Of a DNA stretch of 64,000 nucleotides, positions 4,201 through 64,000 are shown piece by piece. The position numbers and the translations under genes were made by a program. The DNA comes from Heterodontus francisci (taxonomy: Eukaryota). The notes under the pieces are model-generated. The model was given only the letters and a program-made list of their open reading frames with translations, was not told the origin of the DNA and did no database searches. The stretch covers positions 13,082,001 through 13,146,000 of the forward strand of contig NC_090419.1 in the NCBI RefSeq assembly GCF_036365525.1, given 5' to 3'. Numbering within the stretch: the first letter of the stretch is position 1; each line of letters begins with the position of its first letter.

Positions 4201-5713
4201 CCAAATGGACCCAAACCCCTTCCCGTTCACTCCCACTGTACACAATCCCAATGGACCCAAACCCCTTCCCGTTCACTCCCATTGTACACAATCCAAATGG
4301 ACCCAAACCCCTTCCCGTTCACTCCCATTGTACACAATCCAAATGGACCCAAACCCCTTCCCGTTCACTCCCACTGTACACAATCCAAATGGACCCAAAC
4401 CCCTTCCCGTTCACTCCCACTGTACACAATCCCAATGGACCCAAACCCCTTCCCGTTCACTCCCATTGTACACAATCCCAATGGACCCAAACCCCTTCCC
4501 GTTCACTCCCACTGTACACAATCCCAATGGACCCAAACCCCTTCCCGTTCACTCCCATTGTACACAATCCCAATGGACCCAAACCCCTTCCCGTTCACTC
4601 CCATTGTACACAATCCCAATGGACCCAAACCCCTTCCCGTTCACTCCCATTGTACACAATCCAAATGGACCCAAACCCCTTCCCGTTCACTCCCACTGTA
4701 CACAATCCCAATGGACCCAAACCCCTTCCCGTTCACTCCCATTGGACACAATCCAAATGGACCCAAACCCCTTCCCGTTCACTCCCATTGTACACAATCC
4801 AAATGGACCCGAACCCCTTCCTGTTCACTCCCACTGTACACAATCCCAATGGACCCAAACTCCTTCCCGTTCACTCCCATTGTACACAATCCAAATGGAC
4901 CCGAACCCCTTCCTGTTCACTCCCACTGTACACAATCCCAATGGACCCAAACTCCTTCCCGTTCACTCCCATTGTACACAATCCCAATGGACCCAAACCC
5001 CTTCCCGTTTGCTCCCACTCTATACAATCCCAATGGACCCAAACCCCTTCCCGTTTGCTCCCACTGTACACAATCCCAATGGACCCAAACCCCTTCCTGT
5101 TCACTCTCACTATATACAATCCCCATGGACCCAAACCCCTTCCCATTCAATCCCATTGTACACAATCCCAATGGACCCAAACCCCTTCCCATTCACTCCC
5201 ATTGTGCCCTGGCACATTCTTGTTCTATAATTCTCCCTCTGCCAGATAAGGTGGGGTCTGAGGCGGTGCCAGCGGGTCCTCTCGAGGGATGTGAATGATG
5301 TGTCTGGCAGGGAGTGCTGAACGCCTCTCCCTGTTCCTACCTGCTCACATCCTTCCATTCCTGTGAACAATGCCACTGTCAAACTGCTCCATTTACTCCC
5401 CAGGCTCGGTTTTATAATCAAGACTCTCTCCTTTTCTCAGCTATCATTCCATTACTCTTTGGAAATTCCTCGGACTGATTACAGACTTCTTTGGTGGGAA
5501 GGTGCGGATGCTGGAACAACTGGCCGGAGAGGAGGTGTCTCCCAATCCTTTCCCGTGTTGTTGCTGCTGCTGCTTCCCGATGATCTCCGTCAACCGGTGA
5601 GTTCCTGCAGAGAGAGGGACGGTGGGAGGGGACAGACTGAGAGAAAGACAGATTGTGAGAGGGAGTGAGGCAGAAAGAGAGAGAGGGAGAAAGAGGGTGA
5701 GAGAGAGGGAGAC

Positions 5714-5747
<34 letters not shown>

Positions 5748-8340
5748 ATAGTGAGGCAGACNNNNNNNNNNNNNNNNNNNNNNNNNNNNNNNNNNNNNNN
5801 NNNNNNNNNNNNNNNNNNNNNNNNNNNNNNNNNNNNNNNNNNNNNNNNNNNNNNNNNNNNNNNNNNNNNNNNNNNNNNNNNNNNNNNNNNNNNNNNNNNN
5901 NNNNNNNNNNNNNNNNNNNNNNNNNNNNNNNNNNNNNNNNNNCAAAGAGAGACACAGAGCGAGATAGAGAGGGAGACAGAGAAAGGTAGAGAGTGAGACA
6001 TAGAGAGAGTGAGACAGATAAAGAATGTAGCAGACAGAGAGAGAAAAGTAGAGAGAATGAGGCAGACAGAGTGAGAGAGAGACAGAGACAGAATGAAAGA
6101 ACGAGAAAGAGAAAGAGGGAATAAGAGAGAATGAGAGAGAGAGAGACAGAGAGAGAGAGACAGAGAGAGACAGACAGAGAGAGACAGACAGACAGAGGGG
6201 AGAGTGTGAGATAGGCAGAAGATGGATGAAAAGCTTGATTTCAAAAGTGTCTTAAAGGAGGAGAGAGGGAGGCAGAGAGGTTTAGGGAGGGGAATTCCAG
6301 AGCTTAGGGCCCCAGGCAGCTGAAGGCACGGCCGCCAATGGTGGAGCGATGGGAATCGGGGGATGGTCAAGAGGCCGGAATTGGAGGAGGGCAGAGATCT
6401 CAGAGGGTTGCAGGGAGGGACGAGGGCCATGGAGGGATTTGAAAACGAGGATGAGAATTTTAAAATGGAGGTGTTGGCGGAGCGGGAGCCAGTGTAGGTC
6501 AGGGAGCACAGGGGGTTGACGTGTGAACGGGCCAAGTTAGGGCGCGGGGGGGGGCAGCAGATGAGTTGAGGTTTACAGAGGGTTGAATGTGGGAGACCAG
6601 CCAGGAGAACGTTGGAATAGTCAAGTCTAGCGGGGACACTGGCACGGATGAGGGTATCGGCGGCAGATGGGCAGAGGCAGGAACAGAGTCGGGTGATGTT
6701 ACAGAGGTGGAAGTGACGTTTAATGCTGGGCCTCTGAGGTAACGGGTGGTCCCTTACTCTTTCTAAGGTTGAGCCTGAGGTGGATGACGGCAGCTGTGTT
6801 CCAGTTATCGGTTGTCAGGACGATACTCTTCTTTGTCTTGCTTGTGCTGTGGACAGATGAGAAGTACGATTATGGAGATGTGAGTACGTCCTGCAAAGGT
6901 GAGGATCGGGAATCGGAGTCCAGAAGGCAACTGGGATGGAAGGATGATGGAGGTGCTCGGGGGCGGGTTGTGGCCATGCGGCCGTTGGATGAGGATTATT
7001 GGTGGGAGGGTGGCTTACAACAGCCTCTTTGATTAGGGTGGGGAGGCAGCCTCACAGGCTGGGGATTGGTGGAGTTTGGAAAGGGAAGGCTGGAGACCGG
7101 GATGTGTGGTACGGTGGTGTGACATTTCATTGGCCATTTGCAGGTCTCCTTCATCAACCCCAACTCCTATGTCAACATCATTATCGGCGTTTCCACCTTC
7201 CTATCCTTTTACGGTTACCTCTTATACTACAAGGCCACCAAGAACTCGCTGAAGGGCTACGGCCTGCAGGAGAAGTTCATCTGCATCATTGTGGTCCTGG
7301 TGCTATTTGGACTACAGAGTGGAATCCTGGAGACGATGGGGGCACTCGGCGCCATTCCCTGCTTCCCGCCTTTCTCCGTGGACATGCGCACTCAAAGTAA
7401 GTCCGGCACACACCTTAAAACCCAACTCTTTGACCCAGCTTTTGGTCAGCTGTCCCGAACACCTCCTTATCTGGCTTGCTTTTGTTTGACTTTCGCTCCT
7501 GGGATTAAGCACAATAACGTACTTCGGAATTTTGCCTGATTTACTATTGGAGACAGTGAGCTGAGTAGAGGAGGTGGGGTGGAGTGAGCTTTGTTGGGTT
7601 GAGTTGTGTCGGGTTGAGTTGGGTTGGGTTGGGTGTGGATAGGTTGAGTTGAGTTGGGTTGGGTTGGTTTGGGGAAGAGTTCAGTTGGGTTGAGTTGGGT
7701 GAGAATGGTTAGAGCCGAGTTGGTTTGGGTTCAGTGCAGTTGAACCGGGTTGGGTTGGAGTGAGTTGACCTAGGATAGAATTGTATGTAGCCTGTGAAAG
7801 GCCTAAAGCACTTACCGTCTTCCCTGATTCATCCTGTAACACTCTACTGCTGTGCCCCTTGCAGTCATTTTCCATTATGCAGTCATTGTCGAGATGTTCT
7901 TCATCAGCATATTGGCCTGCTATTGCTTCAGGAAGGTGGAGCCATGTGACAACCCTGGTGACGATCTTCCCACAATCAAGCTGCACAAGTCCATGCAGAC
8001 GGAGGACATTGAGTTCGGCGGCAACGATTGTAGCTGCTTTGACCCTGATGGCTTCTCGCTGGGAATGAACCCGGGTTACATCAGTGACGCAGACGATACA
8101 CTGTGCAGGATCGAGCATGCTCCGTTGGATAGGTTTGACTTCAAGACGGCCAAGAAGTTGCTTGCGGACGGCAGTTTTGTCCCCGCACCTCCGAGTGCAG
8201 AGAACGGCGCGGCAAGGAAACTGAGCACCAGTTGGAACGCGTCTCCAGTTCGGGACTGTGTACCTGTTGAAATGAACACTGTTCAGGTGAAGGCACAGAT
8301 TAACTACCGGGATCCCTGTAAAGATGTGACTATGGTCTGA
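1263..8340 (+). CDS. Organic solute transporter subunit alpha-like (SLC51A/OSTalpha family), 5'-partial; exons 1263-1414, 1602-1675, 5441-5596, 6768-6879, 7144-7396, 7865-8340
   Basis: All exons have AG/GT boundaries and join in frame: ..IKSEIWIFIIPAVMTSVILILFLEEIGFF..LWILGIYP|VFAMTSLIGMYIPRSAALCSFIASI|YHSITLWKFLGLITDFFGG..PNPFPCCCCCCFPMISVNR|LSLRWMTAAVFQLSVVR..|VSFINPNS..QSGILETM..IPCFPPFS..|IIFHYAVIVEMFFISILACYCFR.. stop TGA 8338-8340. The poly-Cys loop and multi-TM pattern are OSTalpha hallmarks. The first exon(s) lie upstream of the window. Orthology versus paralogy to SLC51A is not resolved. Confidence 0.88.
1712..5205. repeat. 46-bp minisatellite, ~76 copies, in an SLC51A-like intron
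   Basis: Unit AATGGACCCAAACCCCTTCCCGTTCACTCCCACTGTACACAATCCC; strong C/A strand skew. Confidence 0.97.
5608..6210. repeat. (GA)n/(GACA)n purine-rich microsatellite spanning an assembly gap (N 5762-5942)
   Basis: Seen directly in the sequence. Confidence 0.95.
6235..6720 (-). mobile_element. L2-type LINE 3' fragment (related copies at ~45480-45780 and ~54590-54885)
   Basis: Minus-strand translation LPDLHWLPLRQHLHFKILILVFKSLHG..LWNS.P is typical of L2 ORF2 C-termini. Confidence 0.7.
7590..7770. repeat. (GGGTT/GAGTT)n pentamer microsatellite
   Basis: Seen directly in the sequence. Confidence 0.85.
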
Positions 8341-11549: not shown

Positions 11550-18085
<6,536 letters not shown>

Positions 18086-19999: not shown

Positions 20000-22900
20000 T
20001 TAAAAGTCTTTGTCCCCCTCAGTCACACACAAGCCTCCAAACGCCCCAGCGATGTCACACTGCTCTGCTGAGGGCTCTGACAGCGAGGGTGGCCTCTTGG
20101 AGGGCGAGGGGCCTCGTTCCCGAGCAAGCAGGTTATTTTTCTTCAAAAAACAGGCTTCCTGATAGGGAGGGCAGATGGGAGGTTGGGTGGGTGGAGTATA
20201 AGTGTATTCCTTGCTGGGATCCAGCTGGAGAGAGGGGGCAGAAACACCAGAGTTACGAAACAGAAAACCAAGCACATCTTTCCCGTGTCCATTTGGTGTC
20301 GGCTGTGGCTTGCTGCTGAGTCAGCAGGTGGCGACTTCGAGTTCCCTGTTCCAAAGACGGGAGCAGTACCGAGGGAGTGCCGCACTGCCGGAGGGGCAGT
20401 ACCGAGGGAGCGCCGCACTGTCGGAGGGGCAGCATCGAGGGAGAGCCGCGCTGTCGGAGGGGCAGCATCGAGGGAGAGCCGCGCTGTCGGAGGGGCAGCA
20501 TCGAGGGAGAGCCGCGCTGTCGGAGGGGCAGCATCGAGGGAGTGCCGCGCTGTCGGGAGGAGGCCATTCAGTGAGATTGTGACTGATCTGCAGCCAAACT
20601 TCATATCCAGTCACCATGACAGCAGCTCGCCGCTCTTACCTGTAAAGGGTAGGTCTTGTCCGAGTCGTACGCACTGAGATCGCCACACGCGAGGAAAGGC
20701 ACGATCAGCCTGTTGGGGCCTTCCAGTTGGTTAAAGTCCACATCTTCAGCAAGAGAGGAGGAAAAGAGAGAGAGGTGATAAAGAGGAACTGGTCGAGAAC
20801 CACAGGGCACTGATTTCAGGTGAGAAAGAGCTGGTGTCGAGGGGGGTGGGGGGGGGGGGGGAGCAGCGGGAAGAACAGTATCGCTCTTCGAAAGAGCCAG
20901 CACAGACTCAGATGGGCCGAACAGCCTCTGTACGATCGTACGTGATGGGTTCTCGTGGTTCGGGGGAAGCCGGGAGAGATACAGGAGCGGTGCAGACCCT
21001 GTTCTTACCGTAGGAGTGGTCCAGGAGCGGGTTCGACATGTTGGGCACATACCCCGCGGGGGGCGAGTATCCGCGGCACACCACAAACGCTTCTGCGGAA
21101 GGGAGGGAGAGAAAAAAAAAATAACCAGTCAGCCCTGGCTCCAAGCACCAAATGTCCATTGCAGCTTCTCCCACAACCCCCCCCCACCACTTAATCAGGA
21201 CAATGAGCAAACTATTGCAATAAATCTAGTCCCAGTTCCCATCCCACTGCTTGTTCCCAAATATATCAGCTGCCAGATCTCGGGCGCCATTTCTCGCTGT
21301 GACTTACACGGGAAACACAGCTGCGTCAGGGGCTTAAAGGGTTAAATTACGAGGGACTGTTCGCACAGACTGGGCTCGTGTTCCCTCGAGTGTAGAAGAC
21401 TAAGGGGTGATTGAATCGAGGGGTTTAAGATGATCAAAGGATTCGATCGATATAGTTCATTCTGAAGCTGGGGTCTTAAATCTGAGCAATGGAAACTATG
21501 AAGGTATGAGGGACAAGTTGGCTGTGGTGGATTGGGAAAATAGACAAAGATTTGGCAGTCGACAGGCAATGGTGAGTATTTAAAGAAGTTTTACACGGTT
21601 TACAACAAGTATACATTCCTCGAAGACACAAAAACCCAACAGCAAAAATGAATCAATTGTGGTTAACAAAAGGACTTTAAAGATTGCATTAGATGAAAGG
21701 AATAAGGTCGCTTAAAAAGTGGGAAGCTCGAGGAGTGGGAGCAATTTAGAATCCAGCAAAGGAGGACCAAGAAACTGATAAAGAATGGGGAAGAGAGATT
21801 ATGAATCTAGGCTAGCTAGAAACATAAAGGCGGACTGTAAACGCGTCTGTAGGTGCGTGAAAAGGAAATGATTAGCAAGGACGAATGTGGGTCCATTGCA
21901 GGCGGAGACAGGAGAGTTTGTGCTGGAGAATTGAGGAAATGGCGGAGAGACTGAACAAATACTTTGTGTCTGTCTTCACGGAGGAAGATACAGAAAATCT
22001 CCCAGAAATACCAAGGGACTCGTAAAAATGAGGAACTGAAAGTAATTAGTATTAATAAAGAGGTAGTACTCGAAAAATTAACTGGATTGAAAGTTGATAA
22101 ATCCCCTGGACCAGATGAGCTACATCCCAGAGTGTTGAAGGAGGTAGTTATAGAGATAGTGGATGCATTGGTGGTTATCTTTCAAAATTCTATAGATTCT
22201 GGAAAGTAGCAAATGTAACCCCGCTATTTAAGAAGGGAGGGAGAGAGAAAACGGGGAATTACAGACCTGTTAGTTTGACATCAGTAGTACGGAAAATGTT
22301 AGAATCTATTATAAGGGATGAGATAACTGGACATTTGGAAAATAACGATATGATTGGGCAGAGTCAACACGGATTTGTGAAAGGGAAATCATGTTTGACA
22401 AACTTGTTTGAGTATTTTTGAGGATGTTACTTGTAGCAGAGATAAAGGAGAACCAGTGGCTGTGGTATGTTTGGATTTTCAGATAAGATCCCACACAGGT
22501 TAGCAAAAGATTAGAGCACGTGGGATTGAGGGCTAATATATTGGTATGGATGGAGAATTGGTTCACAGACAGAAAGCAAGAGAGTAGGAATAAATGGATC
22601 ATTCTCAGGATGGCAGGCTGTTACTAGTGGGGTACCGCAAGGATCGGAAGTGGGGCTACAGCTGTTCACGATCTATATCAATGATTTGGACGTGGGGACC
22701 AAATGTAATATTCCCAAATTTGCTGACGACACAAAACTAGGCGGGAATGTGAGTTGTGAGGATGCAAGGAGGCTTCAAGGGGACTTGGACAGGCTAAGTG
22801 AATGGGCAAGAACATGGAAGATGGAATATAATGTGAATAAGTGTGAAGTGATCCACTTTGGTAGGAAAAACAGAAAGAGAGTATTTCTTCAATGGTGAGA

Positions 22901-50264: not shown

Positions 50265-50632
50265 AGGGTTAGATACAGAGTAAAGCTCCCTCTACACTGT
50301 CCCCCATCAAACACTCCCCAGGACAGGTACAGCACGGGGTTAGATACAGAGTAAAGCTCCCTCTACACTGTCCCCCATCAAACACTCCCAGGACAGGTAC
50401 AGCACGGGGGTTAGATACAGAGTAAAGCTCCCTCTACACTGTCCCCATTAAACACTCCCAGGACAGGTACAGTACGGGGTTAGATACAGAGTAAAGCTCC
50501 CTCTACACTGTCCCCCATCAAACACTCCCAGGACAGGTACAGTACGGGGTTAGATACAGAGTAAAGCTCCCTCTACACTGTCCCCCATCAAACACTCCCA
50601 GGACAGGTACAGCACGGGGTTAGATACAGTGT
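50265..50632 (-). repeat. 72-bp minisatellite, ~5 copies
   Basis: Same family as 17190-17846, in reverse orientation. Confidence 0.92.
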
Positions 50633-51488
50633 AAAAGTTACTTATTGCTGCCTCAACAATACTGTAAATTGTGATAATTCCAATTTCTACACTAACCTTC
50701 TTTGAGTGAAATTGATAAATTGTGTTGATGTCTTGGTAATGTTGTGCTGTGGATCTGAACTTTTCCTCTCCTTGCTTATGCTGTTAATCTACATCACTTA
50801 AATCTGTGATTTTTGCTTGGAATATATCTCAGTCAAACTACAATAACCTCACTATCTTACACTGCTTAAGGGGCAAGTTCAGTGTGCTAAGACACCTGAT
50901 CCTATTTTATTGCAGGGTGGAGAGCTGCCTTCTTGAACCGCTGCAGTCCATGTGGGGTAGGTACACCTACAGTGATGTTAGGAAGGGAGTTCCACGATTT
51001 TGACCCAGCGACAGTGAAGGAACGGCGATATAGTTCCAAGTCAGGATGGTGTGTGATTTGGAGGGGAACTTGCAGGTGGTGATGTTCTCATGCATCTATT
51101 GCCCTTGTCCTTCTCGGTGGTGGAGGTCGCGGGTTTGGAAGGAGCCTTGGTGCGTTGCTGCAGTGCATCTTGTAGATGGTACACACTGCTGCCACTGTGC
51201 GTCGGTGGTGGAGGGAGTAAATGTTTGTAGATGGGGTGCCAATCAAGCTGGCTGCTTTGTCCTGGATGGTGTCGAGCTTCTTGAGTGTTGTTGGAGCTGC
51301 ACCCATTCAGGCAAGTGGAGAGTGTTCCATCACACTCCTGACTTGTACCTTGTAGATGGTGGACAGGCTTTGGGGAGTCAGGAGGCGAGGCTGACTGACA
51401 GTAACACCTTGGTTAAAATGAATAGAATTTTCTGGTGAATTAACGAGACTGACCTTTACGAGTGACCTTTCCATCCTCGATCACTAAA

Positions 51489-51528
51489 TTATTGTTTGCA
51501 GAGCTGTTCAGAGCAAAGCTTTCCTCGT
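51489..51528 (-). CDS. WA-like exon 5 (cytoplasmic tail and stop)
   Basis: ttttgtttacAG acceptor, phase-2 compatible; [15 protein letters not shown]. Confidence 0.7.
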
Positions 51529-54500
51529 CTGTAAACAAAAGTATGAAACAGGTTGAAGACGTAGCTTGATAAATTACAACAAAAAACCAGAGCCGTCAGA
51601 GAACGAGGGAACAGATCAGTCACAACAAAGAAAAGTATCTCACCTCTTGTATATTTTTGTCACCAGGTACAGAGTTATCACCAAGCCGAGAACTCCTGCA
51701 ATAACTCCAACAGCACAGACAATGGTCCCAGTGTCAGGCAGTACAGGAGGCTGATCTGTTCAAAACAATCAGGGCAGCAAATTATATCTTGGTTTCTGTA
51801 GTGGGTAGTTATTAATCCAGTATCTCAGCCCAAATGGCCAAAACAGAAACTCTGCCTCCATAAGCAGCAGTGACTGTGTTTTGCATTGCATGTGTACAGT
51901 GGTCTGGGATGTCCCACTGGAAGAAAAAGCAAAAAGATGGATGTGCTTTTCGAAGCGCCTATCATCACCTCCAGACACCATAAAGCATTTCACAGCCAAT
52001 CAGGTACTTTTGAAGTGCTGTACATCACTGTTGTAATGTAGAAAACGCCAGCAGCCAATTTACGCACAGCAAGCTCCCACAAACAGCAATGTGATAATGA
52101 TGATAATCTAGGTTTTCTTTGTGATGTTGACTGAGTGAGAAATATTGGCCTCAGGACACCAGGAAGAACATCTCCCTCAGCTCTTAGTGCTATGGCATCT
52201 TTTCCTCTGTTAACAATACATCTGAAAGACAGCAGATCTGACAGTGCAACACTCCCTCAGTACTGACCCTGCAACTGAGCATTCCGTCAGCACTGACCCT
52301 CCGACAGTGCGGCACTCCCTCAGTACTGACCCTCTGACAGTGCAGCGCTCCCTCAGTACTGACCCTCCAACAGTGCAGCACTCCCTCAGCACTGACCCTC
52401 CGACAGTGCGGCACTCCCTCAGTACTGACCCTCTGACAGTGCGGCGCTCCCTCAGTACTGACCCTGCAACTGAGCATTCCGTCAGCACTGACCCTCCGAC
52501 AGTGCGGCACTCCCTCAGTACTGACCCTCCAACAGTGCAGCACTCCCTCAGTACTGACCCTCCAACAGTGCAGCACTCCCTCAGTACTGACCCTCCAACA
52601 GTGCAGCGCTCCCTCAGTACTGACCCTCCAACAGTGCAGCACTCCCTCAGAACTGACCCTCTGACAGTGCGGCACTCCCTCTTGTACTGACCCTCCGACA
52701 GTGCGGCACTCCCTCAGTACTGACCCTCCGACAGTGCGGCTCTCCCTCAGTACTGACCCTCCAACAGTGCAGCACTCCCTCAGTACTGACCCTCCGACAG
52801 TGCAGCGCTCCCTCAGTACTGACCCTCCGACAGTGCAGTGCTCCCTCAGTACTGACCCTCCGACAGTGCAGCGCTCCCTCAGCACTGACCCTCCGACAGT
52901 GCGGCACTCCCTCAGTACTGCCCCTCCGACAACACACTGAGCCATAGCTGACACACAAGGACTGCGATGAGACGTTAAAATTGCAAGTTGACAGGATATT
53001 CAACTGGGCTGAGACCCGGGGCTGGTCCTGTCCTCGTCCAACGTTCATACATGTAGTCACTGGATTTGGGGGCGGGGCGGGTAGAGGCAGGAATCCTGGC
53101 TGATCATTTCCCCTTCCCTAATGAGTAGTATTGACGCCAAATGTAATGCCCCCTATGCTGCAGCTCACTGAGACCACACTGCATGAGTAAACAACCTGCG
53201 CACTTTTGCTTTCTATAATTCAGAGACACATTGAGCAGGCCCTTTATATATTGCTCCATTGAAAGAACTTGCTATCAAATTTCTGATTAATTATAATGGA
53301 CCTAAAGGTTTGCTTTCTGATAGTACTGCTTTGTGGGACTGAAACAACCTCGGGGGAGGCTTTAAATTGAATTTATAGCATCATACGAGATTGATTGCAA
53401 CATATGATTGAATATTATTGCAGGTTTTCGAGCTGCAGTCTGAAAATCCCAGGTGTCAGATCTCTCTCTGTCTGGGATGGCCGGTTTTACACACGCTGAG
53501 CACTGCGTAACCTAGTTTTTTGATACTGTTGATTAATAAAGTGATTTTTGGTGATGACAGCCCAAGTTTTCCCTCGGGAGACTGATGCTGTGTTTCGCAA
53601 CTACAGGACAGTGTGAACTGAGGATACCGGGTGCAGCTCAGTGTGTGTCAGTATTTACAGGGGGATCCCCCGGGGGAGTGTGTCAGTATTTACAGGGGGA
53701 TCCCCGGGGGAGTGTGTCAGTATTTACAGGGGGGTCCCCGGGGGAGTGTGTCAGTATTCACAGGGGGGTCCCCGGGGGAGTGTGTCAGTATTTACAGGGG
53801 GTCCCTGGGGAATGTGTCAGTATTTACAGGGGGTCCATGGGGAGTGTGTCAGTATTTACAGGGAATCCCCGGGGAGTGTGTCAGTATTTACAGGGGGTCC
53901 CCGGGGGAGTGTGTCAGTATTTACAGGGGGTCCCGGGGGAGTGTGTCAGTATTTACAGGGGTTCCCCGGGGAGTGTGTCAGTATGTAGAGGGGGTCCCTG
54001 GGGAGTGTGTCAGTATTTACAGGGGATCCCCCGTGAATGTGTCATTATTTACAGTGGGGACACCGGGGAGTGTGTCAGTATTTCAGGGGTTTCCCGGGAG
54101 TGTGTATTTACTGGGGGACCCGAGGGAGTGTGCCAGTATTTACAGGGGGTCTTCCACACAGAGAAGTTCGAAAATCTCTGGTGTGAACACCTGATCCTCT
54201 GTATAATTCTTGTCAACCTTTAAATGACGTCCACAGTAACTTAACACCTAACCTACGGTATGTTACATACCCAACAAAACAGTCAGTGGTTTCTCGAGAC
54301 TCATATGAGCTACTTGGCAGCTGTACGTGTCCCCATCATGTGGATCAATCCTGATGTACTTTAAGATGTTAAATGTCCAGTCCTGCTCAACCACTGTTTG
54401 TGATGAATTAACTAGCCCAGTGAATCGCCTCCCATTGATTTGGAAGGTAATGTCGATTTCGAACGGGTAGAATTTTTCTGCGTAACAGTACAGGGTGTTT

Positions 54501-57500
54501 GACTGATGTGGTGTGTAGTTATCCTCAGTGTAGATGTGCACAGCTGGCTTTTCTGTAACAGAGATAACAGTTAACTGTAATAATGACGCCAATCTCCCGT
54601 GGCGTTGCTCACAGTGTGTCAGAGGACATGCTCAACTCCTGTGTCTGTCAGACAATAATTTGACACTGAGCCACATATTAGGCCAGGCAACCCAAAGCTT
54701 GGTCAAAGGTCAAGTTTTAAGGAGCATCTTAAAGGAGGAGAGAGAGAGAGACGGAGAGGTTTAGGGAAGGAATTCCAGAGCTCAGGGCCCCAGGCAGCTG
54801 AAGGCACGGCCGCCAATGGTGGAGCGATGGGAATCGGGGGATGCTCAAGAGGCCGGGATTGGAGGAGCGCAGAGGTCTCGGAGGTAAAGGCCTGCTACCC
54901 GACCCGAATCCGGCGGGACCCGACGACATGTGTCGGGTCTGGGCCGGGTCGGCTCGCTCTTCTGGGTCTGGCTTTCAGGCTCGGGTGGGGTCGGGCCGGG
55001 TCCCGGTTGGACACGCAGTATTAATTGGACTTGGAAGGTTATTTAAAAAGATGAAGATTGGAGCCACGACCTCAGTGATTGTTTGGTCATGAGTTAAACA
55101 GAAACCGACGGAGTTGTGTCCAGACAGGTTGTGCCACACTGTACCAGTATCTGTATTGCTTAAAACAAACACAGCAATTGCCTGAAGGCTCAGAAAATAT
55201 GATTCATTACCTAGACTCCTGCTTTACTGGTTGAAATACTTGCTGCAAGTTTATCCAGTGAGCAGCTGAGAGGCAGAGACCAGGAAGGTCCTGAGTGATT
55301 AATTATTATAAAATATACAGTATTTATATAAAAAATATAAAATGACCACTGTCAGGACTCTAGTCTGGTACAGTACTGTACATGTGTAGACTTTGCATCA
55401 CTGGCCTGGATTGGAAGCCACTGTAGGTCAGTGAACAAAAGAATGGGTCAACAGGACTTGATGTGAGTTAGGTTGGGTTATGCGCAATAGAGATTTGAAA
55501 GATGACGTCCTAGAGAAATTATACAGCACAAATAAAGACAAATGATTTTGATCTAATAGCCGTTACCGAGATATGGTTGCATAGTGACCAAGGTTGGAAA
55601 CAAAATATTCCAGGGTACTTGACGTTTCGAAAATACAAAATGGCTAACAACGAGGTAGCCCTATGGACTGGGAAAGGATCGTGAATCAGAAAAGCAGGAA
55701 ATAAAAACACTATGGAGATAAGAAATAACAAGGGGCAGAAAACACTGGTGGGAATGGGTTATAGGGCACCCCCAACAGTGGCTATACACTGGCCAAGAAA
55801 TAAGAGGAGCTTGCAACAAAGATAGTGCCATAATGGTGGGAGACTTTCATCTTCAAATAGACTGGGCAAATCAAATCAGCAAAAGTAGCTTGGAGGACAG
55901 GTTCATGGAATGCATTTGAGACAGTTTCCTAGAATATTGGGTCATATAAACCAACCAGGGAAGAGGTTATTTAAGTCTTGAGATAGGGTTAATTAGTAAT
56001 CTCATAGTCAAGGATCCCATCGGGCAGAGTGATCATAATATGATAGAATTTCATATTGAGTTTGAGAGTGCCACACTTGCGTCTGGAACTTGAGCACTGA
56101 ACTTAAATAAAGCCACAGGGATGAGGGGAGAGACGGCTAAGGTTGATTGAGAAAATTGACGCATGTCACTGAATGTTAGTGCACTAAAATTAGTGCTCAG
56201 TGTCACGACGAGTAGTTTTAAAAAAAATAAATAACTGTAGACAAGAGACTTACTGCTGATGATTCTTTTAGCATTTGTCAATTTTATCATTTCTTCGGTG
56301 ATGATTTGCAGCCGAGCCTGGAATCCACGTGCCCGCTCTTTAAAATACGTCACTTCTTCCTGGCCCAGTTCCTCTACCCCGTCCGTCATTTTCCCATTTA
56401 GAACAAACATCAGCGCCCCATAATCATAGAACAGGAAGGGAATGGAATTTATATTGAAGATGTCTATGTTTCTTTCTAAATCCGGAGTATTGCTGTAGTA
56501 CAGCCTGGCGGAAACAGATTCAAATTCTGGACAGAGAAAACAGCAGACAAATCACAAAATGAAATTAGACATTTGTACATATATCGCACCTTATGTCTCT
56601 CCAAATCATCGCTAAAGTCTTCATGCACAAGAACTTACTGCAAAGGGCTGTGACTGGTTCTTATGTATTTTGTACACAGTTTGATCCCACAAAGAACAGT
56701 GAGCTGAATGACTCATTGTTCCCAGTTATTAGTTTTGTTGCTTGAAGGTGGAATGTTGGCCAGGACAACAGGAGAACTTCTTGCTCCTCTTCCGAAAGTG
56801 CCATGGGATCTTTAACATCCACCTAAACTAGTGGACGGGGCCTGGATTCAGTGTTTGATCGGACAGTGCAGCAACAGTGCAGGATAAGATGTTCACCCTG
56901 GCTGGTGAGTCTAAACTTAGGAACATAGAAAATAGGACCAGGAGCAGGCCATTTGGCCCTTCAAGCCTGGTCCGCCATTCATTATGATCATGGCTGATCA
57001 TCCAATTCAGTAACCTGTTCCCGCTTTCTCCCCATACCCTTTGATCCCTTTAGACCCAAGAGCTATATCTAACTCCTTCTTGATAACATACAATGTTTTG
57101 GCCTCTACTGCTTTCTGTGGTAGTGAATTCCACAGGCTCACCACTCTCTGGGTGAAGAAAATTCTCCTCAACTCAGTCCTGAAAGGTTTACTCCATATCC
57201 TTAGACTATGGCCCCTGGTTCTGGACTCCCCCACCATCGGGAACATCCTTCCTGCATCTACCCTGTCAAGTCCTGTTAGACTTTTATAGGTTTCTATGAG
57301 ATCCCCCCTCACTCTTCTGAACTCCAGCAAATATAATCCTAACTGACTCAATCTCTCTCCATATGTCAGTCCCACCATCCCAGGAATCAGTCTGGTAAAC
57401 CTTCGCTGCACTCCCTCTATAGCAAGAACATCCTTCCTCAGATAAGGAGACCAAAACTGCACACGATATTCAAGGTGTGGCCTCACCAAGGCCCTGTATA

Positions 57501-59279
57501 ATTGCAGCAAGACATCCCTGCTCCTGTACGCGAATCCTCTCGCTATGAAGGCCAACATACCATTTGCCTTTTTTACCGCCTGTTGCACCTGCATGGGCTG
57601 CTTTGTCCTGGATGGTGTCCGAGCTTCTTGAGTGTTGTTGGAGCTGCAACCGTCCAGGCAAGTGGAGAGTATTCCATCACACTCCTGACATGTGCCTTGT
57701 AGATGGTGGACAGGCATTAGGGAGTCAGGAGGAGAGTTACTCGCTGCAGAATTCCCAGCCTCTGAATACAACCCTCGTCTGTCTAATCTCTCCTCGTAGC
57801 TTAACTCTTGGACTCCAGGCATAATTCTAGCAAATTTATGTCAGATTTGCTTCAAGGCCAATATATCCCTCCTAAGGTGTTGGGCCCAGAGCTTCCACTT
57901 CTGCACATCCAGAACTATGGGCCATAAAATATAAGATAGCAACTCATAAATCCAATCGGAAATTCAGGAGTAACGTCTTTCCCCAGTGAACCAGGAGACA
58001 CAGTCTCAGAATAAGAGACAGGCCATTACAGACTGAGATGAGGAGGAATTTCTTCACTCGGAGGGTGGTGAATCAGTGGAATTCTCTACACCAGAGGGCT
58101 GTGGAAGCTCAGTCATTGAGCATGTTCAAGACTGAAATCGATAGATATCTGGATACTAATGACATCAGAGGGATATGGGATGGGGGAAAATGGCACAGAG
58201 GTAGATGATCAGCCATGATCTGTTTGAATGGCGGAGCAGGCTCGAAGGGCCGAATGGCCTACTCCTGCTCCTATTTCCTATGTTCGTTCCTATTAGCTCT
58301 TCAATGTTCGAGACTGTCAGCCTGAGCTACGGATGCACGTCAGGGAGGGAGCCTGAGATCCAAAACCTGTGACCGGCTGAAACCATTTCCGCCCCAGGGA
58401 ACTGTCAGGAATAACGTGCAGAAGGAGTTTTGAGGAACTTAATATCACATCGCTCCATGAAAGGAACGTTGTGCTACCTAAAACCAGTTTAGAATAATAT
58501 GGAGTAGATTTTCTAATTGAACGGGCCTGACCCAGAGCTCTGTGCAGTGGGGAGTGGGTATCGGGGATTAGTGGGCGGAGGTCAGTGCCTCGACACGTGA
58601 CCTCGCACAACTTCCCGTCCATTCATTTAACTCGTAAGATCCACCGTGCAAATCATCAGGCCTGGAAACCACGCGCACCGATTTCTGCGCTCAAATTCCG
58701 ATATGTGTCTCTGTCACATGAAGCTTTTCACCCGCGGCACGAGCTGTACAATTTATCCTCCGCAGGTGCGAGACCTCACTGAGAGACTGAAACACTTAGC
58801 ATACTGAAATCTGAGTGTGAGCAAAGCACAATTTTTTTTTAAAGTTAAGATTGGAGCACATTTTCAAAAGAGCCGTGCTCATGTTTTTCTGCAGTTTAGT
58901 TTTAAAAAATTCAGAAACATTAACTCTGAAGGTCACAATCATGAGACACTCACTCTTGGAGGCTGAATTTAGCAGCTCATACTCAGACTTTCATCCCATC
59001 AGTCAGGACTGGATTGGAACCCAAACCCCACCCCACCCCCCCACCCCGAGGTGCCTTAACTTGGATCTTCCTTGAGGTCATTTTGCTCAGATTCCCCAGC
59101 AAGAGAGCAGGGCAGCTCAGAGATTGCACCAGCACACTACAAGATCAATTCTGTGATCTAAGCTCCACACCAGGTCACAAGCCAGATCCCAATGGTGTCC
59201 ACACAACACACTCACCGATCGCTGAAATTGTTACTGTAGTAAGTGAGGCGATGATTATTAGGGAGCCACAGAGTTCCAT
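51489..59279 (-). CDS. MHC W-category alpha chain (WA)-like / MHC class II-architecture alpha chain; exons 59279-59216 (leader), 56526-56254 (alpha1), 54552-54271 (alpha2 Ig-C1), 51755-51644 (CP/TM), 51528-51489 (cytoplasmic); 771 nt, 256 aa
   Basis: Leader [21 protein letters not shown] (aacATGG, phase-1 GTGAGT). Cys-free 91-codon membrane-distal domain. C1-set domain [49 protein letters not shown]. Class II-alpha-type [19 protein letters not shown]. Tail [13 protein letters not shown]. Intron phases 1,1,1,2 with no stops. Confidence 0.85.
51644..51755 (-). CDS. WA-like exon 4 (connecting peptide + transmembrane)
   Basis: [38 protein letters not shown]; CxxGxxxGxxG motif as in class II alpha TM helices. 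Confidence 0.88.
51930..52930 (-). mobile_element. DeuSINE (SacSINE1-like) with a 33-bp minisatellite expansion (52240-52930), in a WA intron
   Basis: Reverse complement of the structure at 1-1065. Confidence 0.78.
53640..54150. repeat. ~32-35-bp G-rich minisatellite, ~15 copies
   Basis: Unit GTGTGTCAGTATTTACAGGGGG(A/G)TCCCCGGGGGA. Confidence 0.92.
54271..54552 (-). CDS. WA-like exon 3 (alpha2 Ig C1-set domain)
   Basis: 282 nt, phase 1-1; L-x-C..FYP..YSC-x-V-x-H C1-set signature. Confidence 0.92.
56254..56526 (-). CDS. WA-like exon 2 (alpha1 membrane-distal domain)
   Basis: 273 nt, phase 1-1, open: [91 protein letters not shown]. Beta-strand-like first half (F-x-Y-D motif) followed by a long helix-like segment. 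Confidence 0.8.
56880..58290. mobile_element. Mosaic of CR1-group LINE fragments in WA intron 1
   Basis: ORF 57007-57822 ([19 protein letters not shown]) plus plus-strand 3' ends. Confidence 0.8.
59216..59279 (-). CDS. WA-like exon 1 (signal peptide)
   Basis: ATG GAA CTC TGT..GCG ATC G|GTGAGT; 21 codons + 1 nt; hydrophobic core. Confidence 0.8.
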
Positions 59280-59909
59280 GTTGGGGAAGGACTTCTTGTT
59301 TCTCCAGGAGCACCCGAGTGATGTGAATGCAGCCGTTTCTGTTCACGATTGCTCGGTGCAGCTGCGAACCAACTCCGTTCTGTTTCAATGATGTAACTCA
59401 ATCTCACCATCCAAACACATCACCGGAGGCTCATTTCTCAACTTGGCATTGGTTCAAACTGAGAATCCAGTTGTTCAGGAAACAGAGAGTTTAAATACGT
59501 AACAACTACTTGCCCTTATTTGGAGGCACCTTTAACGTTGCAAAACATCCCAAAGCACCAGACACTGTGGGTTTGGTTGGGGGGTTGGTGGGGGCATTGG
59601 CATCTCCACCTACAGGCAGGATTCAAAATGTTAGCTGGGATGATCAAAGGCAACAGGAATGAGGTAGGTTTTGAGGAAGCTTTTAAAAGAGGAGTGAAAG
59701 ATACCAGGATGGAGGGAATTCCAAAGTGTGGGAGTGGTGTTTAGGTGGATGAGGGGGGTGGGGTGCGGAGAATGGGGAGAGTGAACAATTAGGAGAACAG
59801 AGAGACCCAGAGCTTGAGCAGATGGGAGAAGCAGGATAGGACCAAACATGGAGGGACTTGCAGGAACTGAAGCACTTGAAATGAGTTTTCCACTTTTCCC
59901 CTGGTATAT

Positions 59910-60645
59910 TGGAGCGAATGACCATCTCAAACAAGAGAGAATCTAACCATCTCCCCTTGATGTTCAACAGCATTACCATTGCTGAATCCCCCACTATTAA
60001 CATCCTGGGGGGGGTTACCATTGACCAGAAACTGAACTGGAGTAGCCATATAAATACCGTGGCTACAAGAGCAGGTCGGAGGCTAGGAATCCTGTGGCGA
60101 GTAACTCACCTCCTGACTCCCCAAAGCCTGTCCACCATCTACAAGGTACAAGTCAGGAGTGTGATGGAATACTCTCCACTTGCCTGGATGGGTGCAGCTC
60201 CAACAACACTCAAGAAGCTCGACACCATCCAGGACAAAGCAGCCCGCTTGATTGGCACCCCATCCACAAACATTCACTCCCTCCACCACCGACGCACAGT
60301 GGCAGCAGTGTGTACCATCTACAAGACGCACTGCTGCAACGCACCAAGGCTCCTTCGATGGCACCTTCCAAACCCGTGACCTCTACCACCTGGAAGGACA
60401 AGGGCAGCAGATGCATGGGAACACCACCACTTGCAAGTTCCCCTCCAACCCATACGCCATCCTGACTTGGAACTATATCGCCATTCCTTCACTGTCGCTG
60501 GGTCAAAATCCTGGAACTCCCTTCCTGACAGCACTGTGGGTGTACCTACCTCACAAGGACTGCAGCGGTTCAAGAAGGCAGCTCACCACCAACTTCTCAA
60601 GGGGCAATTAGGGATGGGCAATAAATACTGGCCTAGCCAGTGACA
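59910..60645 (+). mobile_element. Second CR1/L2-group LINE family, 3' fragment (other copies at ~34320-34710, 43790-44215, 50915-51385, all minus)
   Basis: [42 protein letters not shown]. Confidence 0.8.
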
Positions 60646-60649
60646 TCAA

Positions 60650-62340
60650 GAAAGGGATGCTTATGTCAGATACCAAAAGCTCAGTACTGCAGAAAGCCCA
60701 GAGGAGTGCAGAAAGTGCAGGGTGAAATTATAAAGGAAATTAGGAAAGCAAAGAGAGGGCATGAAAAGGTATTGGCAAGTCAAGGAAAAGCCAAAGATGT
60801 TTTATAAATACATAAAGAGCAAGAGGAGAACTAAGGAAAGAGTAGGGCCAATTAGAGACCAAAGAGGTAACACGTGTGGAAGTCATAGGCATGGTTCTCA
60901 ATGAATACTTTGCATCTGTCTTCATAAAAGAGGGCGACAAAGCAGACACTGCAGTTGAGGAGGAGTGTGAAATATTGGATGGAATAAACAGAATGAAAGC
61001 GGAAATATTAAGGAATTTAGCATCTTTGAAAGTGGACAAGTCACCAGGCCCAGATGAAATGTACCCCAGGCTGCTAAGAGAAACAAGGGAGGAAATAGCA
61101 GAGGCTCAGACCATGATTTTCCAATCCTCTCTAGCTACAGGCATGGTGTTGGACTGAAGGATTGCAAATGTAGTATTGTTGTTTAAAAAGGGAGAAAGGA
61201 ATAGACCTAGTAATTACAGACCAGTCAGTCTAACTTCGGTGGTAGATTAATTATCGGGATAAAACTCTGAGGGACAATATTAATTATCATTTCGAAAGGC
61301 ACAGATTAATCGAGGAAAGTCAGCATAGATTTATTAAAGGAAGGTTGTGTCTGACTAACTTGACTGAATTTTTTTTTGAGGAGTTAACAAGGAGGGTTGA
61401 TATGGGTAGCACATTTGAGGTAGTCTTCCTGGATTTTAGAAAGGCTTTTGACAAGATTCCACATGGCAGACTGGCCAGAAAAGTAAAAGCCTGTGGGATC
61501 CAAGGCAAAGTAGCAAGTTGGATCTAAAATTGGTTCAGTGGCAAGAATCAAAGGATCAACACGTGTTTTTGTGACGGGAAGGCGTTTCCAGTGGAATTCC
61601 ACAGGGCTCAGTAATAGTTCGGACTGCAGGAAAATGTCAATGAACTGGTCAGGTGGGGAGAAAAGCGGCAAATGGAATTCAATCTGGAGAAGTGTGAGGT
61701 GATGCATTTGGGGAGGGCAAACAGGTCAGGGAATGCACAATAGGATACTGAGGAGTGTAGAGGAACGGAGGGACCTTGGAGTGCATGTCTACAGATCCCT
61801 GAAGGTGGCTGGACAGATCGATAAGGTGTTCAAGACGACAATATGAAATTCTTGCTTTTATCAGCCGAAGCACAAAATGTAAGAGCTGGGAGGCCCTGCT
61901 AGAACTGTTTAAAACACCAGCTCAACCACAGCTACTGTGTACTGTTCTGGTCACCGCTTTACAGAAAGGATGTGCTGAGCTGGAGAGGGTACAAAGGAGA
62001 TTTATGGGGATATGTCCAGGAATGGAGAATTTGAGCTAAGAGGGAAGATTGGATAGGCTAGAACAGAGGAAGCTGAGGGGAGATTGACTTGAAGTGTATA
62101 AAATTATGAGATAGAGTGGATCGGAAGTTTCTACTTCAATGAGGAGGGATCAATAACTGGGGGTGTCGATTTAAAGCAATTGGTAGAAGGATTAGTGGGG
62201 GGGGGAAGTTGAGTAATATTTTCCCACAGAGGGTGGTGGGGGTCTGGAACTCACAGCCCGAAAGGGTGGTAAGGAAAGAAACCCTCATCACATTTTTAAA
62301 AAATACTTGAATGGGCACGAGGTGCTGTAACCTATGGACC
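60650..62340 (+). mobile_element. Decayed CR1-type LINE between the WA and WB leader exons
   Basis: LNEYFASVF, KSPGPDEMYPRLL and LDFRKAFDKIPH remnants. Confidence 0.82.
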
Positions 62341-62802
62341 AAGAGCTGGAAGGTGGGAGCACTCACTCGTGGGTACCAGGAGCCCCTCAGGAGAGTGCCT
62401 GGTGAGCAGTCCAACTCACCCGAAATATGACCCAGCACTGACAACACACACAGACACACACATATCACACCTCATCAAAGGGTGTCAGCCAGTCACTATT
62501 TATGACGAGACTATCCCTTTAAGAGAAACTATCCCTTTAATGGAAGTTTTGTGACAAGCACGAGGAAGTGGAATCAAATTAATTGTCTGTCAAAGTGCAG
62601 CTGCCGGATAAACCACAGGTGTAATCGGAGTCTTCAATGGTGTGTGTTTCTGTGACCGAGGAGCTTCAGTGGGTGGAGTCAGTGATCTTAATGGAAGGGC
62701 TCGTCTCTCAGGAATTCAAAGCAAGTCTTAGCGGACTCCTCAATTCAATCAGTCGCACCTTTAATTCAGGCCTGCGAGGAGATCCATTGCCTTCCTTTCG
62801 AG

Positions 62803-62869
62803 ATGTCAGTTTTCTACAGATGGGTGTTTGTGGCTGTTTCTGTTCTGGCTGTGGTGGACAGTTCGAGCG
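62803..62869 (+). CDS. Signal-peptide exon of a divergently transcribed gene, probably the W-category beta chain (WB); remainder lies beyond the window
   Basis: gagATG TCA GTT TTC TAC AGA TGG GTG TTT GTG GCT GTT TCT GTT CTG GCT GTG GTG GAC AGT TCG AGC G|GTGAGT = MSVFYRWVFVAVSVLAVVDSSS + phase-1 donor. Lies in unique sequence, head-to-head with the WA-like gene. The WB identity is inferred from this arrangement only. Confidence 0.6.
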
Positions 62870-63489
62870 GTGAGTAGGTTATGACCCTCCCCCTCACTTT
62901 AACACACTACCTGAGGGGTTTGGATCAAGTACATCGGGGAGAAGCTACTGCTCAGTGATTCACTATACGGAGGGTTATCAGGAGATAGGACGTGCTGCCA
63001 GAAACCGTGGTAGGAGCAGAACTCATAATAGCTTTTAAAAGGGAAAGTTGAAGAAGAGAAATGAAAGGCTTGTGGGGAAAGACCAGGGGAATGGGACTCA
63101 GGGTGGAGCTCAGAGAATTGGTACAGGTGCGATGGGCTGAATGGCCTCCAGAATCCACATGTCATTCTTCAATTACGGACTTGCCGGCCATCCCACTTCT
63201 AAATTGGTATGCCTCGTGTCCGTTTTATGCCCGAGAAAGGGCGCAATGTGGGTTAATTGTATAATAATTGAGTATTTAATTGTATGCAGGTGGTGGGTAT
63301 TAACTCGTCATAAAGTGGAGTCATCGAGCCATTTACGGCACAGAAGGAGGCCACTTGGCCCACCGAGTTCATGCTGCCTCTCTGCAGAACTATCCTGTCA
63401 GTCCCACTCCCCTCCTTGATCCAGGTAGCCCTGCAAGTTTATTTCCTTCAAAGTGCCCATCCAACTTCCTTTTTAAACCATGATTTAAT

Positions 63490-64000
63490 AATCATGATGT
63501 CAGCTAGCAAAAAATATAAAAATGGACTGTAAAAGCTTCTGTAGGTACGTAAAAAGGAAACGTTTGGCTAAGACAAATGTGGGTCCATTACAGGCAGAGT
63601 CAGGAGAGTTTATAATGGGGAAATGACAGTGAAGCTAAATGATTACTTTGCGTCTGTCTTCACTGAGGAAGAGACAAGAAATCTCCCAGAATTAGCGATC
63701 CAAGGGATTAGGGGGAATGAGGAATTGAAGGAAATTAGTCTCAGTAAGAACATTGTATTGGAGAAATTAATGGGGCTGAAGGTTGATAAGTCCCCAGGAC
63801 CTGATATTCTACATCCCAGAGTGTTGGAAAAGAGGTAGCTATGGAGATAGTGGATGCATTGGTGATCATCTTCCACAATTCTATAGATTCTGGAGTGATT
63901 CCTGCAGATCGGAAGGTAGCAAATATCACCGCACCATTTAAAAAGGGAGGGAGAGAGAAATCAGGGAATTACAGACCTGCTATAGCCTTACATCAGTCAT
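63490..64000 (+). mobile_element. CR1-type LINE fragment running off the window end
   Basis: LNDYFASVF..KSPGPDILHPRVL. Confidence 0.85.

What the first reader, a model, noticed from the sequence alone, without database searches (positions are those of the whole stretch)
59216..62869. Head-to-head pair of leader exons: hidden partner gene (probable WB) 3.5 kb from WA
Seen in the sequence: a plus-strand ATG at 62803 encodes a clean signal peptide (MSVFYRWVFVAVSVLAVVDSSS) ending at a phase-1 G|GTGAGT donor. It mirrors the minus-strand WA leader (ATG 59279, also G|GTGAGT, phase 1). The two ATGs are 3524 bp apart, and most of the interval is LINE insertions, so the ancestral intergenic distance was probably about 1 kb. 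From recall, W-category alpha and beta genes are reported as head-to-head pairs. Inference: this is a co-regulated alpha/beta heterodimer locus, and the beta1, beta2 and TM exons lie just past the window.
Basis: partly seen in the sequence, partly recalled or inferred. Interest (0 to 1): 0.8.

Follow-up and report, generated by a model that had tools for sequence, protein, structure and literature searches.

The report
Shark WB leader exon facing WA
This is the signal-peptide exon of a horn-shark "W-category" MHC beta-chain gene (WB_Nds5-like), facing its alpha-chain partner head to head; the reading is correct, but the gene pair and layout were already described in sharks in 2021.

Summary
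A + strand ATG at 62803 encodes MSVFYRWVFVAVSVLAVVDSSS. This exon ends in phase 1 at 62869 before GTGAGT. It faces the - strand WA leader (ATG 59279, exon end 59216, also G|GTGAGT).

The - strand gene is an intact WA_DS5-like gene. The + strand leader matches, at about 20 of 22 residues, the leaders of three transcript-derived WB_Nds5L proteins of the congener Heterodontus zebra (SI of Okamura et al. 2021, PMC8713811). It shares the lineage signature with catshark and white-shark WB_Nds5L. In white shark and catshark, WA_DS5L and WB_Nds5L are the published head-to-head pair.

About 2.4 kb of the 3.5-kb interval is two LINE fragments, which leaves about 1.1 kb of non-repeat DNA.

- **RNA evidence:** it is weak, coming from contigs of one run over both leaders.
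- **Co-regulation:** it is untested, and no class I/II SXY motifs were found.

The scan had already noted WB paralogs starting 3.9 kb past the window end, and a second WA/WB pair 62.5 kb beyond it. This is an ordinary new ortholog of a known kind. As a by-product, the RefSeq WA model uses a LINE-derived first exon instead of the true leader.

The parts
62803..62869 (+). Coding part of exon 1 of a WB_Nds5-like gene: signal peptide MSVFYRWVFVAVSVLAVVDSSS plus the first base (G) of a split codon (phase 1)
   Evidence: Sequence read. About 20 of 22 residues match H. zebra WB_Nds5L_1 and _2 leaders in the SI of PMC8713811. The lineage signature is shared with catshark and white shark. It is the best leader-like configuration in the window.
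62870..62875 (+). Splice donor GTGAGT of WB intron 1
62747..62802 (+). Probable 5' UTR of WB (approximate 5' limit)
   Evidence: Run X1 has depth 2.3 in bin 62601-62800 and a contig with depth 8.4 over 62792. All runs have zero depth at 62401-62600. The limit is inferred from bin means, not from a listed contig.
62876..64000 (+). Start of WB intron 1, running off the window; holds dispersed repeats at 63318-63473 and 63503-63997
   Evidence: No open MHC-like exon in any frame. Repeats seen by self-BLAST and direct repeat D1.
59216..59279 (-). Coding part of exon 1 of WA_DS5-like gene: signal peptide [21 protein letters not shown] plus G (phase 1)
   Evidence: tblastn of Heptranchias P0003 residues 13-49 onto 59327-59217 gives 68% identity, E 3e-9. 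It matches the leaders of P0002 and P0004 and of H. zebra WA_DS5-like.
59210..59215 (-). Splice donor GTGAGT of WA intron 1
59280..59420 (-). WA 5' UTR and proximal promoter, covered by a contig of run X1
   Evidence: X1 record 1 is 200 nt long and lies on 59229-59420 with 2 mismatches and 1 gap.
59917..60640 (+). LINE 3' fragment inserted in the intergenic region
   Evidence: Repeat depth of 50,000-600,000 and loose ends at 59917 and 60640. An inverted copy at 57620-57765 is 92% complementary. Self-BLAST covers 60076-60644.
60650..62360 (+). Degenerate LINE carrying a broken reverse-transcriptase ORF, inserted in the intergenic region (ends approximate)
   Evidence: Pfam RVT_1 at 2.1e-7 on 61246-61524. 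Repeat depth through 62400. Self-BLAST covers 61653-62127.
56254..56526 (-). WA alpha1 exon (273 nt, phase 1-1)
   Evidence: 99% identical to RefSeq-derived P0001.
54271..54552 (-). WA alpha2 exon (282 nt, C1-set Ig domain, phase 1-1)
   Evidence: Pfam C1-set at 1.7e-17.
51644..51755 (-). WA connecting peptide / transmembrane / cytoplasmic exon
51489..51528 (-). WA last coding exon, with stop codon TAA at 51491-51489

Best explanation
Positions 62803-62869 (+) are the signal-peptide exon of a horn-shark W-category MHC beta-chain gene of the WB_Nds5-like lineage. It lies head to head with an intact WA_DS5-like alpha-chain gene (51489-59279, -). Transcription starts a few tens of bases upstream of the ATG. 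The exon is spliced at G|GTGAGT in phase 1 to a beta1 exon beyond the window, giving a D or E codon at the junction. The signal peptide is probably cleaved after SSS. By analogy with other species, the mature WB chain pairs with a WA chain into a class II-shaped membrane heterodimer. The two genes diverge from an intergenic region that was originally about 1.1 kb long. Two LINE insertions have stretched it to 3.5 kb. Shown here: the exon anatomy, the identity of the leader, the identity and integrity of WA, and the repeat content of the interval. Inferred: the downstream WB exons in this genome, heterodimer formation, and shared (bidirectional) regulation.
For: The sequence anatomy was read. 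Leader-like configurations are rare in the window, and this one is the best of 5. WA is identified by 76-99% identity of its alpha1 exon to shark WA_DS5-type proteins, including Triakis 'MHC class II alpha chain like protein'. Its alpha2 exon is a C1-set domain, and all exons are intact with canonical splice sites. H. zebra WB_Nds5L_1, _2 and _3, predicted from transcriptome contigs, start with near-identical leaders followed by D or E. Catshark and white-shark WB_Nds5L share the M(S/P)V(F/L)YRW...S(V/I)LD signature, and other WB lineages do not. Published head-to-head WA_DS5L/WB_Nds5L pairs exist in white shark and catshark. Run X1 has contigs over both first exons, while the flanking unique DNA has zero depth.
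Against: No beta1, beta2 or TM exon is in the window, so an intact WB body in this genome is not demonstrated here. The RNA evidence comes from contigs of a run only guessed to be RNA. Depths are low (3.8 and 8.4). The splice joint was not displayed. The contigs differ from the window at 62792 and around 59371, so they could come from an allele or from the paralogous pair. A phmmer search with the leader stretch found nothing, although a 22-residue signal peptide is too short for that to be informative. No shared or class I/II-type promoter motif was found in the non-repeat DNA.
Confidence: 0.9

Rival explanations
1. An orphan or relic leader exon. The WB body downstream has been lost, inverted away or pseudogenised, so the exon is conserved in sequence only because the event was recent.
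For: The rest of the gene is not visible in the window. The locus is riddled with LINE insertions and minisatellites. Earlier scan notes describe inverted duplications and gene conversion in this cluster.
Against: The ORF, the ATG and a consensus donor are all intact. The leader differs from the transcribed H. zebra orthologs at only about 2 residues. A contig of run X1 covers it. An unverified scan note places WB exons from 3.9 kb past the window end.
Confidence: 0.07
2. The leader belongs to a different immunoglobulin-superfamily or secreted-protein gene, or is a chance ORF next to a chance GTGAGT.
For: Signal peptides are short and compositionally simple. Pfam finds nothing in the 61-residue open stretch, and phmmer finds nothing.
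Against: About 20 of 22 residues are identical to a lineage-specific leader, including the rare residues W, Y, R and M. Its position and orientation next to WA_DS5L match the published pair exactly. Only 5 such configurations exist in 128 kb of scanned strand.
Confidence: 0.02

Closest known systems
WA_DS5L/WB_Nds5L head-to-head pair of great white shark (285-kb contig) and cloudy catshark (82-kb and 159-kb contigs), Okamura et al. 2021, PNAS, PMC8713811, Fig. S11
   Same: The alpha lineage is the same (WA_DS5-like). The beta leader signature is the same. The divergent orientation is the same, and the pair sits in a multi-pair W-category cluster.
   Different: The species and order differ (Heterodontiformes). 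Here the interval between the start codons is 3.5 kb, of which about 2.4 kb is two LINE fragments. Spacing in the other sharks was not available to me.
Heterodontus zebra WB_Nds5L_1, _2 and _3 (TSA GGGL01449143, GGGL01449112, GGGL01449138) from the same paper
   Same: The leaders are near-identical and are followed by D or E, as the phase-1 G| predicts. These are congeneric orthologs or paralogs, known as transcripts.
   Different: They are known only as cDNA-level sequences, without a genomic map. Which of the three corresponds to this locus cannot be decided from 22 residues. The text copy of the SI is machine-read and may drop letters.
Zebrafish WA/WB pair (same paper, SI)
   Same: A head-to-head arrangement, with no class I/II-type conserved promoter motifs found between the start codons.
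   Different: The zebrafish start codons are 227 bp apart, against 3524 bp here (about 1.1 kb without repeats).
Classical MHC class II alpha/beta gene pairs
   Same: The exon plan is the same (leader, distal domain, C1-set domain, CP/TM/CY), with phase-1 leader junctions and paired alpha and beta genes.
   Different: W-category chains carry class I-like sequence features (per the paper). No SXY-type module was found here by consensus scan.

Membership tests
W-category beta chain, WB_Nds5-like lineage | Lineage-typical signal peptide (M-S/P-V-F/L-Y-R-W ... S-V/I-L-D ... S-S) | tested here: met
   The window peptide was compared by eye with H. zebra, catshark and white-shark WB_Nds5L in the SI of PMC8713811. 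It matches the H. zebra forms at about 20 of 22 residues. The one difference inside the signature is A for D after SVL.
W-category beta chain, WB_Nds5-like lineage | Phase-1 leader/beta1 junction giving D or E as the first mature residue | tested here: inconclusive
   The donor side fits: a single G precedes GTGAGT, and the orthologs have D or E at that position. The acceptor and the beta1 exon lie outside the window.
W-category beta chain, WB_Nds5-like lineage | beta1 domain exon (QCEC-type), beta2 C1-set exon with class I alpha3-like features, and CP/TM/CY exon | not testable with these tools
The other collections hold no shark genome.
W-category beta chain, WB_Nds5-like lineage | Head-to-head neighbour of a WA_DS5-like gene | tested here: met
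   The WA_DS5-like gene lies at 51489-59279 (-). The leaders diverge, 3524 bp apart.
W-category beta chain, WB_Nds5-like lineage | Transcribed and spliced to WB exons in this species | tested here: inconclusive
   Contigs of run X1 cover the exon area while the flanks have zero depth. The run type is only a guess, and no joint or loose end at 62869 was listed.
W-category alpha chain, WA_DS5-like lineage (the facing gene) | Class II-type exon plan with a C1-set alpha2 domain, and high identity to the type WA_DS5 of Triakis scyllium | tested here: met
   Five coding exons, all open, with canonical splice sites. C1-set at 1.7e-17. Identity to Triakis P0004 is 76% (73% in the tblastn) over the alpha1 exon and about 76% over alpha2. 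It nearly matches 'zebra bullhead shark WA DS5L' in the paper's datasets.
Classical MHC class I/II promoter (SXY module, ISRE) | X1 (RFX), X2 (CRE) and Y (CCAAT) boxes in order, or an ISRE, within the proximal promoter | tested here: not met
   The consensus scan of the non-repeat DNA found three CCAAT sites in WA orientation, one TGACG half-site and one GAAACT IRF half-site, plus one GAGGAAGT and one RUNX site. There was no RFX site and no full ISRE. The longest words shared between the two sides are at chance level. This was a simple consensus scan only.

The most novel reading that the evidence does not exclude
The W-category pair is driven by a bidirectional promoter unlike the SXY/ISRE promoters of classical MHC genes. 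In this horn-shark copy, two LINE insertions have split that promoter into a WA-proximal part of about 640 bp and a WB-proximal part of about 440 bp. If so, this locus would be a natural experiment on whether WA and WB expression stays coupled.
Probability: 0.15. Interest if true: 0.35.

Novelty: new member of a known kind. Interest (0 to 1): 0.15.

Why it matters
The result places the horn-shark ortholog of a published shark gene pair (WA_DS5L/WB_Nds5L) on the genome. It also shows where the true first exons are. That is useful for annotation, because the RefSeq-derived WA protein (P0001) starts in a LINE ORF and misses the real signal peptide. A gene finder could likewise miss a 67-nt WB leader that sits about 5 kb ahead of the next exon. 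It adds nothing new about what W-category molecules do. The only mildly open point is how the pair is regulated, since no classical MHC promoter module is present.

Tried and rejected

2. The search of protein representatives (phmmer) with the 32-residue stretch 62779-62874: 0 hits. A 22-residue signal peptide is too short to reach significance in 1.8 billion proteins, so this says nothing either way.

3. Pfam on the 61-residue open stretch around the leader: nothing, as expected for a signal peptide.

4. The search for homologous proteins cannot reach full-length WB proteins from a stretch of 61 residues or fewer because of its length window, so I ran no further search on it.

5. I did not type the paper's WB sequences into any tool, because only window, locus or stored-protein sequence may be typed. 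A search for horn-shark WB proteins starting from those sequences was therefore left out.

The alpha1 exon was searched on its own, as a region of an open stretch, and the other exons were compared by tblastn.

7. Read laying (one call, 58001-64000) showed depth over both leaders in run X1. It did not list the contigs or any loose end at 62869, so splicing was not seen.

8. A search for shared or known promoter motifs in the two non-repeat flanks gave nothing above chance.

9. A scan of the whole window for WB-type beta1, beta2 or TM signatures, or for a second C1-set exon, found none.
Full report
**1. Observation**

- **+ strand:** ATG at 62803, then 22 codons (MSVFYRWVFVAVSVLAVVDSSS), a lone G at 62869, and GTGAGT at 62870-62875.
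- **- strand:** ATG at 59279, peptide [21 protein letters not shown], a lone G at 59216, and GTGAGT at 59215-59210.

Both exons are phase-1 leader exons, and their start codons are 3524 bp apart.

I scanned the whole window on both strands for ATG + 14-34 open codons + 1 base + GTRAGT. There are only 5 such configurations, and the 62803 exon has the best hydrophobic core of them, 9 of 10. The pattern is therefore not a common chance event in this DNA.

**2. The facing gene is WA_DS5-like and intact**

- **alpha2 exon:** the - strand open stretch at 54266-54631 is a C1-set Ig domain (Pfam 1.7e-17).
- **alpha1 exon:** searched on its own, as residues 9-100 of the open stretch 56054-56551. It found a Heterodontus francisci RefSeq-derived protein at 99% identity (P0001). 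It also found Scyliorhinus, Heptranchias and Triakis scyllium proteins at 76-78%. The Triakis entry is the 'MHC class II alpha chain like protein' of the group that defined the W-category.
- **Exon map:** tblastn and the sequence itself give leader 59279-59216, alpha1 56526-56254, alpha2 54552-54271, CP/TM/CY 51755-51644, and last exon 51528-51489. All exons are open with canonical splice sites.
- **Leader:** it aligns to Heptranchias P0003 (59327-59217, E 3e-9). It also matches the leaders of P0002 and P0004 and of H. zebra WA_DS5-like.
- **Lineage:** the alpha1 sequence is nearly that of 'zebra bullhead shark WA DS5L' in the paper's Dataset S1.

This identifies the genome as horn shark and the gene as WA_DS5-like.

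**3. The + strand leader belongs to WB_Nds5L**

The SI Appendix of Okamura et al. 2021 (PMC8713811) lists three H. zebra proteins, WB_Nds5L_1, _2 and _3. They were predicted from transcriptome contigs (GGGL01449143, GGGL01449112 and GGGL01449138).

| Protein | Leader | Mature protein starts |
|---|---|---|
| WB_Nds5L_1 | MSVFYSWVVFVAVSVLDVVDSSS | DLHLFHVQCEC... |
| WB_Nds5L_2 | MSVFYRWVFAVSVLDVVDSSS | DIHLFHVQCEC... |
| WB_Nds5L_3 | MSVFYRWVLVAV...SVLDVVESSS | ELRLY... |

The held text is a machine-read PDF, so single letters may be missing.

The window peptide agrees with forms 1 and 2 at about 20 of 22 positions. The lone G before the donor fits a split GAT/GAA codon for the D or E that follows in the transcripts.

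Cloudy catshark (MSVLYRWVFAVAA...SVLDLVDCST; MPVFNRRWFVAV...SVLDMVDC..) and great white shark (MPVFYRWIFVAV...SILDEV...SS) WB_Nds5L leaders carry the same signature. WB_DS1 and WB_DS3 leaders are unrelated.

The paper states that white shark has three head-to-head pairs, one of which is WA_DS5L/WB_Nds5L. It also states that catshark contigs have the same order, and the main text says the head-to-head layout holds for sharks, teleosts and coelacanth. So the lineage of the alpha gene, the lineage of the leader, and their relative orientation all match the published pair.

**4. The interval between the two leaders**

- **First LINE fragment:** positions 59917-60640 are the 3' part of a LINE. Repeat depth there is up to about 600,000, with loose ends exactly at 59917 and 60640 in many contigs. 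An inverted copy at 57620-57765 is 92% complementary.
- **Second LINE fragment:** about 60650-62360 is a second, degenerate LINE. Pfam RVT_1 scores 2e-7 on 61246-61524, and repeat depth continues through 62400.
- **Promoter motifs:** a consensus scan of this non-repeat DNA found no RFX/X-box and no full ISRE, and no X-X2-Y arrangement. It found three CCAAT sites in WA orientation, a TGACG half-site, a GAAACT IRF half-site, a GAGGAAGT (62562-62569) and a RUNX site (62611-62617). The longest words shared between the two sides are at shuffle level.

The paper likewise reports no classical MHC promoter motifs in the 227-bp zebrafish WA/WB interval.

**5. Expression**

One sequencing-run search found three runs of one sample, guessed to be RNA and kept as contigs. 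I laid them on 58001-64000.

- Run X1 has a 200-nt contig on 59229-59420, covering the WA leader and upstream sequence.
- X1 also has depth over 62601-63000, including a contig of depth 8.4 over 62792 that reads G for T.
- All three runs have zero depth over unique DNA at 58401-58800 and 62401-62600.

That pattern fits RNA rather than genomic DNA, and it suggests both first exons are expressed in the same run. However, the depths are low, the contigs over the WB exon were not listed, and no joint or loose end at 62869 was shown. The small differences from the window also mean the contigs could come from an allele or from the paralogous pair. I count this as weak support only.

**6. What could not be done**

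- **Rest of the WB gene:** it is not in the window. No beta1, beta2 or TM signature and no second C1-set exon were found.
- **Leader search:** phmmer with the leader stretch against 1.8 billion representatives gave no hit. For 22 residues this is uninformative.
- **Paper sequences:** I did not search a joined WA model.
- **Earlier scan notes:** these are unchecked AI notes. They say two inverted WB paralogs begin 3854 letters past the window end, and that a second WA/WB head-to-head pair lies 62.5 kb past it. I could not verify this.

**7. Verdict**

The exon is real. It is very probably (0.9) the leader of a WB_Nds5-like gene paired head to head with WA_DS5-like.

This is a correct reading of a known arrangement, so it is a new ortholog rather than a new kind. 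I found no paper that mentions the W-category together with Heterodontus in its main text, although H. zebra sequences are in the 2021 SI. [quoted passage not shown] Co-regulation remains an inference.

The practical by-product is an annotation error. The RefSeq-derived WA protein P0001 begins with 27 residues from a LINE ORF (57822-57742) instead of the true leader at 59279-59216.

Noticed in passing
window 57742-57822 (-) versus 59216-59279 (-): The H. francisci database protein P0001 (named 'RLA class II histocompatibility antigen, DP alpha-1 chain-like') starts with 27 residues ([27 protein letters not shown]) encoded by a LINE ORF inside WA intron 1. It lacks the true signal peptide, which all other shark WA_DS5 proteins have. 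This looks like a wrong first exon in the gene model.
   Followed up: yes
window 52240-52931 and 53643-54151 (WA intron between the alpha2 and TM exons); also 1-733, 15106-15497 and 20363-20556: A 33-nt minisatellite family recurs at several places in the window, including inside the WA gene. A separate 32-nt array lies next to it.
   Followed up: no
window 1717-5205: A 3.5-kb array of a 46-nt unit (76 copies, 93% matches) that is open in several frames. An assembly gap follows at 5762-5942; it was left untouched.
   Followed up: no
window 17197-17847 and 50266-50635: A 70-72-nt tandem repeat is present in opposite orientations at two sites 33 kb apart. It may be the dispersed 72-bp minisatellite named in another scan note (s1-872589).
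   Followed up: no
SI of PMC8713811 (H. zebra WA_DS10-like) and scan note s1-872867, 31.8 kb past the window end: The published H. zebra WA_DS10-like sequence begins with a long run of SKLFPSLLLP-type repeats. This fits the scan note about a WA signal-peptide exon inflated by an in-frame minisatellite. The paper also reports read-through transcripts running from WA_DS10-like into WA_DS5-like, which implies that WA_DS10L lies upstream of this WA on the same strand.
   Followed up: no
window 62792 and 59371: The X1 contigs differ from the assembly at two places: T>G at 62792, 11 nt upstream of the WB ATG, and a 1-nt deletion at 59371 in the WA upstream region. The cause could be an allele, another individual, or the paralogous WA/WB pair.
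   Followed up: no
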